From assembly GCF_040938485.1 (NCBI RefSeq), contig NW_027270907.1, positions 1,798,001-1,862,000 on the forward strand: 64,000 nucleotides of DNA, written 5' to 3'. Shown piece by piece: positions 868 to 24,617 of this stretch. This DNA comes from Diadema antillarum (taxonomy: Eukaryota). The notes under the pieces were generated by a model. It saw nothing but the letters and a program-made list of their open reading frames with translations. It was not told where the DNA came from and made no database searches. Numbering within the stretch: the first letter of the stretch is position 1; each line of letters starts with the position of its first letter. The translations under genes and the position numbers were made by a program.

Positions 868-3800
868 CTCTTGAATTCCTGAACACACAAGTTTGAAAGG
901 GCGCTGGTAATGTCATCTCCTCCACACTCATGATGTGTCTTTGAGGCCTCAATCCTGTAGAGGCCATTTGTCACATTGACAACTGACACACTCACTGTGC
1001 TGCCTCCAAGTCTGTACACTAGCACATTACTGGAAAGAACCACAAAACCAACATCTGGGTAAGCTGACAAATGCTGTAACAGCACATCTAAAAGGTCAAA
1101 AAAAGGTATGGCCCAGCTCACAACGACATGCATTATGTCAACCACAATAATATTTTTAACCTCCAAACTATAACTATGTAATCATGACTATGCATCCAGA
1201 TTTCAAACAAATAGAACACCACTGACATATATCATCATTGAACATTTACAAACACTTGTGTTTCTGAAGATGAGTGAACTAAATCACTCCTTCATCTAGA
1301 ATAATTGATGGCACTACAGTCCAAACTCTCTAATCCGGACATGTGGGGACCGGGGCTCATCTGCATGAGGGATTTGGTGGGATATGGGAGACTTAATGTT
1401 TGATACATGCAGCTGCCTACCCAATGGTAGCTACATGTTACTTATTGCAGGTAGCATATACTCATACTCTTTCTTTGCTACAAGTGCAAAATTATAGGCA
1501 TTTCTCTTTTTTTTTTTTTAATAAAATGAAAATAAATTTGTTGTCAAATAATATGTAATTCATGAGAGCTTGTGTAGGAATTTTTTTAAAGTTTAAAATC
1601 CCCCCTTTTCCTGTAATTATTAGATTGAAAAAAAAAAGAAGCAAACAAACAAACAATCATGGTAAGATTGCATCCGGATAATAGAGAGATCCGGATAAAG
1701 GGAGGCCAGATAAGAGAGGTTGGACTGTACTTCTGTTAATGACAGGTGATATAGGCATACCATGGATCATGAAGCTTTGTAACCCCGATGCTGTAAGCTA
1801 GAGCTGCTGCAGAAGGCTCACTGATTAAGCGTAAGACATCAAATCCTGCCACTTCTGCTGCTTTCCTGCCAAACAAAGAAAAAATACCACATAATTATCA
1901 AATATTGCTACATTTCTTTACATGTATTTCTCAACTACCCACAATGATAAGAACTTCCAGGAACATTAGCAAATTGGATGATTTCTTGTGCTCATTTCTA
2001 TCACTCTCAATGAAACTGAAACAAAAGAATATATTGTCTGCAGCTGTCATGCCAGTTTCACACAAAAGCATGAGATATCTGTTGTTTCACTGTTTCATTT
2101 GGCACTGCAGATTTATATCAACATTGATGTGCAGGGTGGTATATGAGGGAGTTATGCATAATATCGTAATGCCTTGCCAACGATTTCGTTGAACATTAAC
2201 GTGGTGTCACCGGAAAAAAAAAAAAAATGACATCACATAGACAATAGAAAACTTGCCAAAGAGCCAAATGTGTCCATTAAATTCTAGAAAACATACATGT
2301 AGCTCAAGATCTATTCTTAGATCATAGCTCCTTTACTGATAACCATTCAAGAATATTCCATTAAGGATAAGGTCCATCTCAAACTCAAGAGAATCCTAGG
2401 TCCTTGAGAGGGTGCTGGACCCCAGCTGCACGAGACTTTGCAATTCATACTTGTGATGCCTGTGGTGAATACAATTTCAAGATCTCTTTCCAGTCATCGT
2501 GCTTAAATTTGCAAGTTGTGGACTACACTGGACATGTGTCATAGCGTGTATGAACAATAATGAACAATACTGCTATAACTGGACAGAAAGAACAGCTGGT
2601 ATTTAGGCTCTAATGATTTTTTAGAAAGCTGTATTTAGTTTAATAATATATCCTCTGCTATCAGTTGGGATTTTGTCATAATTTCTACATATATGGGAAT
2701 TTATCAACAAAAAAGATAAGCTTAGAAGCAGACATTCGTACACAGAAAGGGGCATGGTAAAGAAAGGCAGCTTCACTACAGTGCACACAACTACAGCAGG
2801 TAAACAGGAGATATCCTTATTAAAGAGGAAATCCACCCCCAAAATAAATAAACTTAAAAAAAAAAGAAAAAAAATTCCCTACAAAGTGTTCCAAAAATGA
2901 CAAAAATCAGATAAGAAGTAAGGAAGATATGACATTTTGAAATTTCACATTTCTTAAGAAAACATTTCTTGACCAGTCCATATTCAAATGAGTGAGTTGA
3001 TGATGTCACACCGTCACAATTTTTCATGTACATCATACATGAAATTCTGACAAATTTTCATTTCCATCTAATACAGGTACAAACATATTCCCATACCAAA
3101 ATATATCGGAGTGAACATTTCTTTTTAATTTGGGTGGTATTTATAAGGCTGAAATATGAGATTTTTTGTAATTTCATATAATGAAATGAATAGGAAAATG
3201 TGAGTACATGACAGCATCAACTTGCTGATTTAAATATTCATAACGACTGCTCAAGAAGGGTTTTCCAAAGAAATTTACAAAAAATTCAAAATGTCTTATT
3301 TCTTATTCAATTTTGATCATGTTGCACTGTTCTGCAGGGATTTTTTTTTTCGCTTTCTTATGAAATTGATACAATTTTGGAGTGGATATCTTCTTTAGGT
3401 CAACTAATCATTGATACCCACCTTACTGCATCCCTTTGTTGGCCTGAGAAATCAGCTGGTACTGTTAGGACCGCACTCTTTACACTTTTGCCTCCCCCAT
3501 GCTCTGCAATTTCTGTTCATGATAGATATGACAATACACTGTTAATGCCATCTAATTAAAAAAGAATATAAAAAGTTTTAAGGAAAACGTGACTGAGTTC
3601 CCATCACATGTAGCAATAACTAAACTGTCTGATTTTTCTTAAGTTTAATCAGCTCTTTGTTTTTGCAGTAGCATTGCATAATAATCTTACATCTGTGGGT
3701 AGCTAAAAAATAGCTTTGTGGCTCAGATTCAGAAATTTCACAGTTTAAAACAAGTTTGAAATATGACTAGTGTGAACAGAATCTCATTATAAATGTGAAA

Positions 3801-5663
3801 AAAAATGCAATACAGAAAACTGTACATTTTGTCTTTGAACGATCAGCTGCTTGGCTGAATTGAAATTTGAAGTTTGTTTGCATTGGTAATATAGACAGAA
3901 TTCACAGTTGGAAATCTGATACAAAATACAAAACAAACGTTGCAAAGAAAGAATAGGATGTTAATCACTTTAGAAATTACTGTTATACATGTATAATTAA
4001 GTCATGGAAAAACAAGTTTTGTTTTTGTTTTGTTTTTAACTATAGGATTATATTGGTTGTGGACCCAGTGTACATGTACTTTAATACAATCAAGATTATT
4101 CTATTGACATGCAAATGCAAACAAGAATGAACCTTTCAATTTCTTAAAGATGAGGACAGCAACTTCCAGAGAAGAGATGAGTATCTTCTTGTTGTTAAGT
4201 TCCACCTCAAAGCCTGCCAGGCCCTGTTTGTCTACCACTCTGAATGCAGATCTCTTCTTCACAGCTAGGACCACTTGATCTTCAAAAGACCTTCCTAACA
4301 GGTGTTTGACATGCATCACAGTGTTTACCGGGTTGCGCAGTCTTCCTTGCTTTGCAGCTAGCCCTACAACCTGTCAAACAAAGTCCAAGAAATAATCACC
4401 AATGCAAAAATCTTGGAATCATTTTTGTAGTGCCTCAAGCAAAGAGATTTCCATCTTGATGATCCCAGAGATGCAGTCAAAAAGTATTGTAATCATGTCT
4501 CTCCATCTTTCACATGTGGGTTAGTTTCAAAAGGTTACTCCTTATTCAGGAAGTGAAAGTCAAAGATTCTTACAACTGCATTTCAGCTTTGTGATTTACT
4601 TACTATTTTCAATTTAGTGGTCTTCATATTGCCAGATATCGCACAGTTATTCAAGGACTGACACTACCACCAGCACCAGCAAGGACAAGTGCTTATCTAA
4701 ATCCCAAAATTTATCAGGACCCCATTGCACAAAAGATGCAATCAAACATTAAGTCAGAAAATCAAACTACAGTGCAAGTCAAATATCAGCCAATTCATAA
4801 CATGTTGCACCACAGACAAGGTGCCTTGAGGTACCCGGTATCTGTCGTTAGTCCCTGGGGTCAGCAAAGGTCATTCATTGTTCCCAATGAGCAGAGTGAA
4901 GAAGAGTGGATAAGTAGAGGGAATGTATTTGAAAAAAAAAATATCCAAATTGGTTTCTTTGCATTTTTGCTTTTCGGACAATGATCAATCCATGCAGTAT
5001 ACATGTACTGTATGTCAGTGCACAGCATATCAAACCATTAAAACTCCGGTAGCAGATCGACACAACATACCTTGTCATTGTCACTGAAGGCTACCACGTT
5101 TGGAGTAGTTCTGTCACCTGCATCATTGGCCAAAACTTCAGTTTTTTCATCCTGCCATAACAAAGTGCAAAACACATTAGGAGCCGAAATGATAATCGAA
5201 AGTATGGTGGCTACTTCCTCAGTATAGTGTCATCAGTTATGTGTAACCTGGCACATACATGATGTACTCATAGAGGAATAGAGAAGAAAGAAAAATAAAA
5301 CCACACCTTAACACTGTGAAGGGGAATGACACCCCTCCAACTCCATGATGCAGATAGTTTGTTTGGTGGTGTGTACCACTGTATCTTCGTTCTTATTTGG
5401 TCCCAAAATATCATCGGTCCAATGTCCTACACAGCTACAGCACTAAAATGTACCCACACCACTGGCCATCACACTAAGCAATAAGATGTCATACATATAC
5501 ATCTTATTCTTGCCACCTCTGTGCGGGCGTGGCTGCTGGCCATTGATCGTGAAAGCAGAACCAAACTTCTGCCCTTTGGATAGAATGTACTTAGTAAGAT
5601 TTTCTCTGAGAAACTCACAGTTAAAGAGACAAAAGTTTGAGACAAGACCACCCCCCCCCCCAA

Positions 5664-24300: not shown

Positions 24301-24617
24301 TGCAGTGTTTTTGCTATATTTGCTATTCATCATTGAATGGTTGGAATAGCTGATACATTCTGACTTGTTCTATAACTTAAAGCAATACTAACATGTTTTC
24401 TTCTGTTCGTCTTCTCTCTCTCTCTCTCTCTGTCACAGAAAAACAAATTGATTTGGATGCAGTAGATCTGAAGAAACTGAAAGTAAAGGACTTGAAGAAG
24501 ATTTTGACTGACTGGGGAGAGAGTTGCAAATCCTGCTTAGAGAAGAACGATTTCATCGAAAAGATAGAAGAACTGAAGCCAAAGTACTTCAAAAAGCAGC
24601 AAAAGCAGGAATTATAA
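9623..24617 (+). CDS. MANF: MANF/CDNF (ARMET) family ER-stress neurotrophic factor, complete 4-exon gene, 185 aa
   Basis: Exons 9623-9734 (signal peptide [29 protein letters not shown], then KLKEGECE), 21794-21918 (VCLSVV...[13 protein letters not shown]), 22377-22518 ([22 protein letters not shown]...[17 protein letters not shown]), 24439-24617 ([36 protein letters not shown]...KQEL stop). Phases 1,0,1 are consistent. Saposin-like cysteines, CXXC (CKSC) and a KDEL-like C-terminus are present. Confidence 0.96.
9958..10394. mobile_element. ~440-bp MITE with 20-bp perfect TIRs and inner inverted repeats
   Basis: TTCTCCCTATCGCATATAGC ... GCTATATGCGATAGGGAGAA; inner pair TCTTGGGATATAAACTTCCGGTT (~10033) / AACCGGAAGTTTACGTCCCAAGA (~10304). 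Confidence 0.8.
12480..14780. repeat. Degenerate ~480-bp tandem array (~5 units) with orientation flips near 13000 and 13625
   Basis: Recurring blocks AAGATTGTGAACTTTGGTCT, GAGACAGAACTGCA, GGTATCATGCATAAAAGTAGACAAAA and AAAAACCACAAT. They read forward at 12480-12990 and 13670-14780 and as reverse complement at 13000-13650. Confidence 0.85.
15317..15346. repeat. (AT)n microsatellite
   Basis: Directly visible. Confidence 0.9.
15715..17630. repeat. ~1.9-kb degenerate palindrome: ~400-bp outer arms plus a ~170-bp central palindrome
   Basis: GTCCGAACGTAATTAGCTGGCCCAGT (~16072) pairs with ACTGGGCCAGCTAATTACGTTCGGAC (~17295). TTTCGAAGCAAAATCTAGTT (~15863) pairs with AACTAGATTTTGCTTCGAAA (~17477). 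Centre TCTGATGCGGCGAGACTACG (~16945) pairs with CGTAGTCTCGCCGCATCAGA (~17015). Confidence 0.85.
23429..23995. mobile_element. Kolobok-like MITE (~560 bp) in MANF intron 3
   Basis: TTAA-AGGACAAGTTCACCTTCAT ... ATGAAGGTGAAATTGTCCT-TTAA; TTAA target sites with purine-purine termini. Confidence 0.8.

What the first reader, a model, noticed from the sequence alone, without database searches (positions are those of the whole stretch)
868..24617. HSPA14-MANF/CDNF head-to-head pair mirrors the human HSPA14-CDNF arrangement
Seen: the HSPA14 ATG (9233, -) and MANF-family ATG (9623, +) are 390 bp apart. Established, from memory: human HSPA14 and CDNF are head-to-head on chr10p13, while human MANF lies elsewhere. 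Inference: the pairing predates the vertebrate MANF/CDNF duplication, so vertebrate CDNF rather than MANF kept the ancestral locus. A shared promoter may couple a cytosolic co-translational chaperone (RAC) to an ER-lumen stress factor.
Basis: partly seen in the sequence, partly recalled or inferred. Interest (0 to 1): 0.7.

Follow-up and report, generated by a model that had tools for sequence, protein, structure and literature searches.

The report
Ancient head-to-head HSPA14–MANF gene pair
In this sea-urchin (Diadema) DNA a ribosome-chaperone gene (HSPA14) and an ER-stress factor gene (MANF) start 389 bases apart on opposite strands, and the same arrangement in starfish, amphioxus, scallop and, for CDNF, a mammal shows the pairing goes back at least to the common ancestor of bilaterian animals.

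Summary
The HSPA14-like ATG at 9233 (-) and the MANF ATG at 9623 (+) are separated by 389 bp. The 4-exon MANF model is 184/185 identical to NCBI's Diadema antillarum MANF.

The main inference is supported.
- The same divergent Hsp70-family/ARMET pair, with 305-461 bp between start codons, occurs in Lytechinus, Acanthaster, Branchiostoma, Pecten and next to marmot CDNF.
- It is absent within 10 kb in a crinoid, Saccoglossus, Limulus, Exaiptasia and Oscarella.
- A tree places vertebrate MANF+CDNF in one clade (100/99), with all invertebrate proteins, amphioxus included, outside it.
- So the pair predates the vertebrate duplication, and CDNF kept the HSPA14 neighbour.

New here: a 23-nt element (CCAATCA-N5-CGMCAAATGTA) followed by (C/A)CACGT lies 48-77 bp from the HSPA14 ATG in echinoderms and scallop. 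A matrix trained on echinoderms alone finds it as the top hit of the whole locus upstream of MANF in Pecten, Exaiptasia and a crinoid. It is therefore an old MANF promoter element that physically interleaves the two promoters.

Co-regulation is untested, because no RNA run was listed. No canonical ERSE or ERSE-II is present.

This is a new example of a known kind, the conserved bidirectional gene pair. I found no paper describing it.

The parts
9174..9233 (-). HSPA14-like exon 1 (ATG at 9233; 20 codons, phase 0 donor)
   Evidence: tblastn finds the same exon 1 at the same position relative to MANF/CDNF in Lytechinus, Acanthaster, amphioxus, Pecten and marmot.
5071..5151 (-). HSPA14-like exon 2 (27 codons, contains ANDAGDRTTP)
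   Evidence: Pfam HSP70. AG/GT splice sites. 55-66% identical to Acanthaster, marmot and Pecten exons.
4133..4370 (-). HSPA14-like exon 3 (79 codons + 1 nt); one exon here, split near aa 75-92 in the other taxa
   Evidence: Best solved Hsp70 scores only about 35 bits.
3422..3512 (-). HSPA14-like exon 4
1761..1865 (-). HSPA14-like exon 5
   Evidence: Pfam HSP70.
868..1029 (-). HSPA14-like exon 6; the last exon inside the window, the gene continues beyond position 1
   Evidence: Pfam HSP70, 37.7 bits.
9234..9622 (.). 389-bp intergenic region between the two start codons; putative bidirectional promoter (CpG o/e 0.90, against 0.2-0.3 in the flanking gene bodies)
   Evidence: Equivalent gaps are 307/350, 321, 319, 305 and 461 bp in Lytechinus, Acanthaster, amphioxus, Pecten and marmot CDNF.
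9262..9269 (-). CRE/ATF-like octamer TGACGTAA, invariant core in Diadema, Lytechinus and Acanthaster
9281..9303 (+). Conserved 23-nt MANF-promoter element CCAATCA-N5-CGACAAATGTA (NF-Y-type CCAAT box plus an unassigned 11-mer), 48 bp from the HSPA14 ATG and 342 bp from the MANF ATG
   Evidence: Unique in the 64-kb window, 0 expected. An echinoderm-trained matrix finds it as the top hit of the locus upstream of MANF in Pecten (22.2 bits), Exaiptasia (20.6) and Anneissia (15.9). The maximum over 663,946 background positions is 14.3.
9314..9322 (.). GTCCACGTG: CCACG/CACGTG box; the 8-mer GTCCACGT is identical in Diadema, Acanthaster and amphioxus
9623..9734 (+). MANF exon 1 (signal peptide, ends ...EGECE, phase 1)
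   Evidence: Identical to the N-terminus of P0152.
21794..21918 (+). MANF exon 2 (ARMET_N first half)
22377..22518 (+). MANF exon 3 (ARMET_N second half)
24439..24617 (+). MANF exon 4 (ARMET_C/SAP-like domain with CKSC, C-terminal KQEL, stop included)
10607..20984 (.). Lineage-specific repeat-rich, CpG-retaining block that inflates MANF intron 1 to 12 kb (Lytechinus intron 1 is 1.8-3.1 kb)
   Evidence: CpG o/e 0.9-1.4. Clusters of TAGCTAACGT-type 10-mers at 10624-10775 and 20850-20917 plus nested inverted repeats. Lytechinus exon spacing.
29884..30825 (-). Single-exon DUF4504 (PF14953) gene, tail-to-tail downstream neighbour of MANF, conserved in ambulacrarians and near MANF in amphioxus
   Evidence: tblastn E 1e-19 to 2e-35. 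Neighbour tables.

Best explanation
The window, from a Diadema sea urchin, carries a real divergent gene pair. One gene is the 5' half of the HSPA14 ortholog, the atypical Hsp70 of the ribosome-associated complex. The other is the single pre-duplication MANF/CDNF gene.

The two are transcribed outward from a 389-bp CpG-retaining intergenic region. The arrangement was already present in the last common ancestor of protostomes and deuterostomes. It was inherited by vertebrate CDNF after the vertebrate-specific MANF/CDNF duplication, and it has been broken independently in several lineages.

Most likely reason for its persistence: the two core promoters are physically interleaved. An old MANF upstream element (CCAAT box + CGMCAAATGTA + CCACGT) lies within 48-77 bp of the HSPA14 start codon, so few breakpoints can separate the genes without damaging one of them.

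Shown: gene identities, orientation, spacing, phylogenetic distribution, timing of the duplication, and conservation of the element. Inferred: the positions of the transcription start sites, that the element is bound (NF-Y plus a partner), and that promoter overlap rather than functional coupling preserves the pair.
For: Gene models and identities; 184/185 identity to P0152; transcript-level exon junctions in L001.

Head-to-head Hsp70/ARMET pairs, with ATG-ATG gaps:
- Lytechinus: 307/350 bp
- Acanthaster: 321 bp
- Branchiostoma: 319 bp
- Pecten: 305 bp
- marmot CDNF: 461 bp
. Mouse and sole adjacency is in the literature.

Orthology of the Hsp70 gene:
- collinear exon hits whose pieces break at the window's exon junctions;
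- much weaker similarity to all solved Hsp70s;
- ortholog lengths of 507-567 aa.

Tree: vertebrate MANF+CDNF clade 100/99, with amphioxus and all other invertebrates outside it. The window protein falls in the echinoid clade, 100/99. [quoted passage not shown]

Promoter:
- CpG o/e 0.9 against 0.2-0.3 in the gene bodies;
- invariant TTACGTCA, CCAAT, CAAATGTA and CACGT blocks across echinoids and a sea star;
- an echinoderm-only matrix gives the top hit of the whole locus upstream of MANF in Pecten, Exaiptasia and Anneissia, with no background position reaching 15 bits among 663,946.
Against: - No expression data: no RNA run was listed. Transcription start sites, bidirectional activity and co-expression are therefore not shown.
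- The pair is absent within 10 kb upstream of MANF in Anneissia, Saccoglossus, Limulus, Exaiptasia and Oscarella. It is therefore dispensable.
- One genome per lineage was sampled, and absence relies on 10-kb flanks. The Limulus flank has a 1-kb gap, which was not filled.
- The conserved element goes with MANF even where HSPA14 is not adjacent. It is therefore not evidence of joint regulation.
- Pairwise local alignment of whole intergenic regions between phyla is only marginal (z about 3; 3-4 of 300 shuffles reach the observed score).
- HSPA14 orthology was not tested by a family-wide tree, because no full-length HSPA14 or paralog sequences could be fetched (one search found nothing).
Confidence: 0.82

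Rival explanations
1. Functional co-regulation. The shared promoter exists to couple expression of a cytosolic co-translational chaperone with an ER-lumen stress factor, for example under proteotoxic or ER stress, and selection for that coupling keeps the genes together.
For: Both genes belong to Hsp70-centred proteostasis. HSPA14 works with DNAJC2, and MANF stabilises BiP-client complexes. The intergenic region holds conserved CRE-like, CCAAT and CCACG(TG) boxes of the kind used by ATF6/XBP1/NF-Y-type stress promoters. The pair has been kept for more than 500 My in four phyla.
Against: - No canonical ERSE (CCAAT-N9-CCACG) or ERSE-II is present; the CCAAT-CCACG spacing is about 30-43 bp and variable.
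- In vertebrates the ER-stress-inducible, ERSE-II-bearing paralog is MANF, which is not reported next to HSPA14. CDNF lacks ERSE-II, and the marmot CDNF promoter lacks the old element.
- The conserved element stays with MANF where HSPA14 is not adjacent (Exaiptasia, crinoid).
- The pair has been lost in at least three bilaterian lineages.
- No expression data could be obtained.
Confidence: 0.2
2. Neutral retention. The pair is simply a piece of old microsynteny that has survived in slowly rearranging genomes (amphioxus, scallop, echinoderms, vertebrates), with no special constraint from the promoter.
For: The tail-to-tail MANF-DUF4504 adjacency, which shares no promoter, is also kept across echinoids, a sea star, a crinoid and an enteropneust, and DUF4504 is near MANF in amphioxus. 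The pair is lost in several lineages.
Against: Over the longest distances (scallop against deuterostomes, and the vertebrate CDNF locus) only the head-to-head neighbour is retained and DUF4504 is not. The spacing stays within 305-461 bp everywhere. A conserved MANF element abuts the HSPA14 start codon.
Confidence: 0.25
3. Chance or convergent adjacency: the genes became neighbours independently in urchins and in vertebrates.
For: None beyond the patchy distribution (absent in 5 of 11 lineages sampled).
Against: The orientation is the same, the exon-1 structure is the same and the gap is similar in six genera of four phyla. A specific neighbour out of roughly 20,000 genes recurring independently several times is not credible.
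Confidence: 0.02

Closest known systems
Mammalian and teleost CDNF-HSPA14 locus (human 10p13 from memory; mouse chr2 Cdnf-Hspa14-Suv39h2, sole BAC cdnf-hspa14, marmot locus L007)
   Same: Divergent orientation. A 509-aa Hsp70-family gene whose ATG lies 461 bp from the CDNF ATG in marmot. Four-exon ARMET gene. The Hsp70 alignment pieces break at the same exon 1 and exon 2 junctions.
   Different: The urchin gene is the unduplicated MANF/CDNF co-ortholog and is closer in sequence to MANF. The marmot intergenic region is GC-rich (59%) and lacks the CCAATCA-N5-CGMCAAATGTA element.
Conserved bidirectional (head-to-head, under 1 kb) promoters of animals, typically CpG-rich and enriched for NF-Y, GABP/ETS and YY1 sites (established knowledge)
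   Same: Less than 400 bp between start codons. CpG-retaining island in a CpG-depleted neighbourhood. CCAAT box in all species, and CCGGAAG (ETS/GABP-type) in amphioxus and Pecten.
   Different: Bidirectional activity and co-expression are not demonstrated here. I found no published description of the depth of conservation (protostome-deuterostome) or of the specific pair.
ERSE / ERSE-II elements of mammalian UPR genes, including the mammalian MANF promoter (Mizobuchi 2007, as cited in PMC6095968)
   Same: A CCAAT box combined with a CCACG box upstream of a MANF gene.
   Different: The spacing is about 30-43 bp and variable, not 9 (ERSE) or 1 in inverted order (ERSE-II). An extra invariant CGMCAAATGTA block lies between the two boxes. 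No canonical match was found.

Membership tests
MANF/CDNF (ARMET) family | N-terminal saposin-like domain (ARMET_N) plus C-terminal SAP-like domain (ARMET_C) | tested here: met
   PF20145 hits exons 2 and 3 (E 2e-8 and 1.6e-16). PF10208 hits exon 4 (E 1.4e-23).
MANF/CDNF (ARMET) family | Eight conserved cysteines including the C-terminal CXXC, an N-terminal signal sequence, and a C-terminal KDEL-like retention motif | tested here: met
   The spliced 185-aa product has 8 cysteines in the mature part, with CKSC, a hydrophobic N-terminus, and KQEL at the end. The signal peptide was judged by eye, not by a predictor.
MANF/CDNF (ARMET) family | Four coding exons with conserved junctions | tested here: met
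   GT-AG model. The junctions coincide with the blocks of the L001 transcript and with Lytechinus exons. Vertebrate MANF/CDNF are reported as four exons with conserved splice sites.
MANF/CDNF (ARMET) family | Position relative to the vertebrate duplication (MANF, CDNF or pre-duplication) | tested here: met
   Pre-duplication. The vertebrate MANF+CDNF clade has 100/99 support and excludes the window protein, which groups with echinoids at 100/99.
HSPA14 (Hsp70L1, the Hsp70 subunit of the ribosome-associated complex) | Hsp70 nucleotide-binding domain | tested here: met
   PF00012 hits four exon ORFs in collinear profile order, positions 15-241.
HSPA14 (Hsp70L1, the Hsp70 subunit of the ribosome-associated complex) | Orthology to vertebrate HSPA14 rather than to canonical or other atypical Hsp70s | tested here: inconclusive
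   Supportive but indirect.
- 48-68% identity to exons 1-3 of the CDNF-adjacent 509-aa marmot gene, against about 30-36 bits per exon to every solved Hsp70.
- Alignment pieces break at the window's exon junctions.
- Conserved synteny in five taxa.
- No family-wide tree could be built. The word search with exon 3 found nothing, and no HSPA14 chain appears in the PDB hits.
HSPA14 (Hsp70L1, the Hsp70 subunit of the ribosome-associated complex) | Short protein (about 509 aa) lacking the C-terminal lid and EEVD | not testable with these tools
   The gene runs off the window after 245 aa. Annotated genes at the same position are 519 aa (Lytechinus), 529 (Acanthaster), 507 (Pecten), 567 (amphioxus) and 509 (marmot).
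Bidirectional-promoter gene pair | Divergent orientation with less than 1 kb between the 5' ends | tested here: met
   389 bp lie between the ATGs. The transcription start sites themselves were not mapped.
Bidirectional-promoter gene pair | Shared unmethylated, CpG-island-like region | tested here: met
   CpG o/e is 0.90 in the intergenic region against 0.16-0.32 in the flanking gene bodies. It is 0.82-1.32 in the other species.
Bidirectional-promoter gene pair | Transcription in both directions from the region, and correlated expression | not testable with these tools
   No RNA run was listed for this sequence.
ERSE / ERSE-II stress-response promoter | CCAAT-N9-CCACG or ATTGG-N-CCACG | tested here: not met
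   There is no match on either strand in 8900-10000. CCAAT (9281) and CCACG (9316) are 30 bp apart.

The most novel reading that the evidence does not exclude
The 23-nt CCAATCA-N5-CGMCAAATGTA block, with its downstream CCACGT box, is an ancestral eumetazoan regulatory module of MANF, conserved from a sea anemone to molluscs and echinoderms. It may be the original unfolded-protein-response element of this gene. Because it sits at the HSPA14 start in bilaterians, it would drive both genes, tying ribosome-associated and ER-lumen proteostasis to one switch. Vertebrates would have resolved this after duplication, with MANF keeping stress control through ERSE-II and CDNF keeping the HSPA14 partner.
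Probability: 0.2. Interest if true: 0.7.

Novelty: new member of a known kind. Interest (0 to 1): 0.55.

Why it matters

This locus shows that the unduplicated gene was already paired head-to-head with HSPA14 in the bilaterian ancestor. The fast-evolving CDNF, not the sequence-conservative MANF, kept that partner.

It also shows that a specific upstream element of MANF is conserved between cnidarians, molluscs and echinoderms. That gives three concrete things to test:
- a reporter-testable promoter module;
- a prediction about what the vertebrate MANF promoter retained or lost;
- a clean case for asking whether interleaved promoters, rather than shared function, preserve gene pairs for half a billion years.

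Tried and rejected
- RNA evidence. The look-up of sequencing runs on 4000-10000 listed no RNA run, so read laying was not used and the transcription start sites remain unmapped.
- Naming the Hsp70 gene. The word search with the exon-3 ORF returned nothing, because of the length window and the divergence. The PDB holds no HSPA14 chain among the hits. Full spliced proteins were not typed into tools, so no Hsp70 family tree was built.
- Failed look-up. The look-up for the coral Montipora protein P0301 was 'not on record'. P0003 proved to be a transcript contig without genomic context.
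- Stress elements. Canonical ERSE, ERSE-II, UPRE, HSE, NRF1, ETS and Sp1 motifs were sought in the window's promoter. Only a CRE-like octamer, CCAAT, CCACG/CACGTG, an octamer and TATA-like strings were found.
- Whole-region alignment. Local alignment of intergenic regions between phyla is only marginal. The position-specific matrix test was used instead.
- Bacterial-type promoter scan: irrelevant to a eukaryote.
- Exaiptasia's 514-aa upstream gene was checked as a possible divergent HSPA14 and rejected: no tblastn hit and no Hsp70-like ORFs.
- No human contig was fetched or compared; a marmot locus stood in for mammals. The N run in the Limulus flank was left unfilled.

Full report
**What is in the window.** The region is animal DNA with introns.

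On the plus strand, four GT-AG exons (9623-9734, 21794-21918, 22377-22518, 24439-24617) splice into a 185-aa protein. It has a hydrophobic N-terminus, eight cysteines in the mature part including CKSC, and a C-terminal KQEL. Pfam assigns ARMET_N to exons 2-3 and ARMET_C to exon 4. The product differs at one residue (K178R) from NCBI's 'mesencephalic astrocyte-derived neurotrophic factor homolog [Diadema antillarum]', P0152. The window therefore comes from Diadema, either D. antillarum or a close congener. A transcript contig from a related urchin (L001, protein P0003) aligns in four blocks whose boundaries coincide with my exon junctions. The long first intron (12 kb) and the far-upstream exon 1 are therefore real.

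On the minus strand, six GT-AG exons (9233-9174, 5151-5071, 4370-4133, 3512-3422, 1865-1761, 1029-868) encode 245 aa of an Hsp70 nucleotide-binding domain (Pfam HSP70). No further exon lies between 868 and position 1, so the gene runs off the window.

The two start codons are separated by 389 bases.

**Is the minus-strand gene HSPA14?** Direct naming failed. The exon-sized query found nothing in the word search, and no HSPA14 chain appears among the solved structures. The indirect evidence is consistent.
- Every solved Hsp70 (HSPA1A, HSPA8, HSPA2, BiP, DnaK, Ssb1) matches single exons at only about 24-36 bits.
- The exons of the 509-aa Hsp70-family gene that lies head-to-head with marmot CDNF match at 48-68% identity. 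In mouse the gene next to Cdnf is Hspa14.
- tblastn of the spliced 245 aa gives collinear hits in Acanthaster, Pecten and amphioxus. The pieces end at the window's exon junctions (aa 20/21, 47/48, ~126, ~157, ~191).
- All species share the opening MAA(S)(I/L/V/F)G(V/I) and an exon 1 ending at the same lysine.
- The annotated genes at that position are 507-567 aa, the size class of HSPA14 rather than of canonical 640-aa Hsp70s.

**Distribution of the pair.** I used full-length MANF/CDNF proteins recovered from the database searches to pull genomic loci with 10-kb flanks.

Pair present, as a minus-strand HSP70 gene whose ATG lies just upstream of a plus-strand ARMET gene:

| Taxon | ATG-ATG gap |
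|---|---|
| Lytechinus pictus | 307 bp, and 350 bp in a second assembly; exon 1 present in all three loci |
| Acanthaster planci | 321 bp |
| Branchiostoma floridae | 319 bp |
| Pecten maximus | 305 bp |
| Marmota marmota CDNF | 461 bp |

Published gene lists show Cdnf-Hspa14 adjacency in mouse and cdnf-hspa14 in a sole BAC.

Pair not found within 10 kb upstream of MANF:

| Taxon | What lies upstream instead |
|---|---|
| Anneissia (crinoid) | TBK1-like kinase |
| Saccoglossus | MFS transporter |
| Limulus | No gene called and no tblastn hit; a 1-kb N gap was left unfilled |
| Exaiptasia | Unrelated 514-aa gene |
| Oscarella | FSIP1 |

Presence in a mollusc and in three deuterostome phyla, always in the same orientation and within a narrow spacing range, places the pair at least in the protostome-deuterostome ancestor. 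The crinoid, enteropneust and horseshoe-crab lineages then lost it later. The two non-bilaterians sampled lack it, so an older origin is neither shown nor excluded.

**Timing of the MANF/CDNF duplication.** I built a maximum-likelihood tree of 38 proteins: the window protein, 10 ambulacrarians, amphioxus, molluscs, arthropods, cnidarians, sponges, six vertebrate MANFs and four CDNFs.
- Vertebrate MANF+CDNF form a clade with 100/99 support.
- Amphioxus and all other invertebrates fall outside it.
- The window protein sits inside an echinoid clade (100/99).
- CDNF sits on a long stem (1.15 changes per column).

One refinement, which rests on my own knowledge and was not tested here. Human 10p13-p15 and parts of chromosome 3 share several paralog pairs. 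MANF and CDNF are thus probably products of the vertebrate genome duplications. In that case both loci are 'ancestral', and the HSPA14 copy beside MANF was simply lost.

**The promoter.** The intergenic 389 bp has CpG o/e 0.90, while both gene bodies are strongly CpG-depleted (0.16-0.32). The equivalent regions in the other species are also CpG-retaining (0.82-1.32).

Alignment of Diadema, Lytechinus and Acanthaster shows invariant blocks just upstream of the HSPA14 ATG: TTACGTCA (CRE/ATF-like), CCAAT, CAAATGTA and CACGT.

The IUPAC pattern CCAATSRNNNNNCGMCARATGTA occurs once in the window (0 expected). It occurs once in each Lytechinus, Acanthaster and Pecten locus, always in the intergenic region.

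Because I wrote that pattern after seeing Pecten, I repeated the test with a matrix trained on the three echinoderms only.
- The top hit of the entire locus, on both strands, lies upstream of MANF on the MANF strand in Pecten (22.2 bits, runner-up 13.5).
- The same holds in the anemone Exaiptasia (20.6, runner-up 13.0) and in the crinoid Anneissia (15.9, runner-up 11.7).
- Amphioxus has a weak match (11.5).
- Saccoglossus, Limulus, Oscarella and marmot CDNF have none.
- Across 663,946 background positions the maximum is 14.3.

A (C/A)CACGT box follows 11-50 bp downstream in most species. The 8-mer GTCCACGT is identical in Diadema, Acanthaster and amphioxus.

Since Exaiptasia and the crinoid lack the HSPA14 neighbour, the element belongs to MANF. 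In echinoderms and scallop it sits only 48-77 bp from the HSPA14 start codon, that is, in or at the HSPA14 5' end. The related urchin transcript has a 174-nt 5' UTR without the element, which puts the element roughly 90-170 bp upstream of the MANF start site. That is the usual place for an NF-Y box. The two promoters are therefore physically interleaved. This part is inference from geometry; no start site was mapped.

**How it most likely works, and what is not shown.** The best-supported reading is a classical bidirectional promoter whose interleaved elements make the pair hard to separate.

It remains possible but has no direct support.
- No RNA run was listed.
- There is no canonical ERSE or ERSE-II.
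- In mammals the ERSE-II-bearing, stress-inducible paralog is MANF, while CDNF lacks it.
- The marmot CDNF promoter lacks the old element.
- Several lineages have split the pair.

A neutral-retention reading also has some support. The promoter-independent neighbour DUF4504 (window 29884-30825, minus strand) is kept with MANF across ambulacrarians. Over the longest distances, however, only the head-to-head partner survives.

**Novelty.** Full-text searches combined HSPA14 with CDNF, ARMETL1, MANF, head-to-head, bidirectional or microsynteny. They also combined MANF/CDNF with synteny or genome duplication. They returned only incidental co-listings in genomic intervals. The mammalian adjacency is visible in any genome browser, and conserved bidirectional pairs are a well-known class. 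I therefore file this as a new member of a known kind. The cnidarian-to-echinoderm MANF promoter element is the most original by-product.

**Limits.**
- One genome was sampled per lineage.
- Flanks were 10 kb.
- There are no expression data.
- There is no Hsp70 family tree.
- No human sequence was fetched, and assembly gaps were left as they are.

Noticed in passing
window 10607-20984 (MANF intron 1): MANF intron 1 is 12 kb here but only 1.8-3.1 kb in Lytechinus. The extra DNA keeps CpG o/e at about 0.9-1.4 and has no long ORFs. It is bounded and peppered by clusters of the palindromic 10-mer family TAGCTAACGT (10624-10775, 20850-20917 and others), with nested inverted repeats. It looks like a lineage-specific repeat or MITE-like accumulation that has stayed unmethylated, next to the promoter island.
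   Followed up: partly
window 29884-30825 (-): There is a single-exon DUF4504 (PF14953) gene tail-to-tail with MANF. The same neighbour follows MANF in Lytechinus, Acanthaster, Anneissia and Saccoglossus, and lies near it in amphioxus. HSPA14-MANF-DUF4504 is therefore an old ambulacrarian block.
   Followed up: partly
window 4133-4370 (-): HSPA14 exon 3 is one 238-nt exon in Diadema. In Acanthaster, amphioxus and marmot the homologous coding sequence is interrupted near aa 75-77, and in Pecten near aa 92. This suggests an intron loss in the Diadema lineage.
   Followed up: no
window 1-26000: CpG depletion is a sharp mosaic. Both gene bodies have CpG o/e of 0.14-0.44, with one exception: the 6001-7000 bin in HSPA14 intron 1 reaches 0.62. 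From 9 to 21 kb the values are 0.83-1.39. The pattern is consistent with gene-body methylation flanking a large unmethylated domain.
   Followed up: no
window 7317-7673 (+), inside HSPA14 intron 1: A 118-aa ORF resembles the C-terminal tail of a non-LTR retrotransposon reverse transcriptase. It has no Pfam hit at E<0.1 and is probably a decayed insertion.
   Followed up: no
L002 and L003 (Lytechinus pictus GCA_018143015.1, CM031017.1 3.11 Mb and 3.16 Mb): The whole HSPA14-exon-1/MANF/DUF4504 region occurs twice, 53 kb apart on the same chromosome, nearly identical. The second assembly shows one copy. This is probably an uncollapsed haplotype or a very recent segmental duplication.
   Followed up: no
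L012 9846-9868 (Exaiptasia) and L008 9827-9849 (Anneissia): Strong matches to the echinoderm MANF-promoter element lie 155 and 174 bp upstream of the MANF ATG in species that lack the HSPA14 neighbour. The element therefore predates, or is independent of, the pairing.
   Followed up: yes
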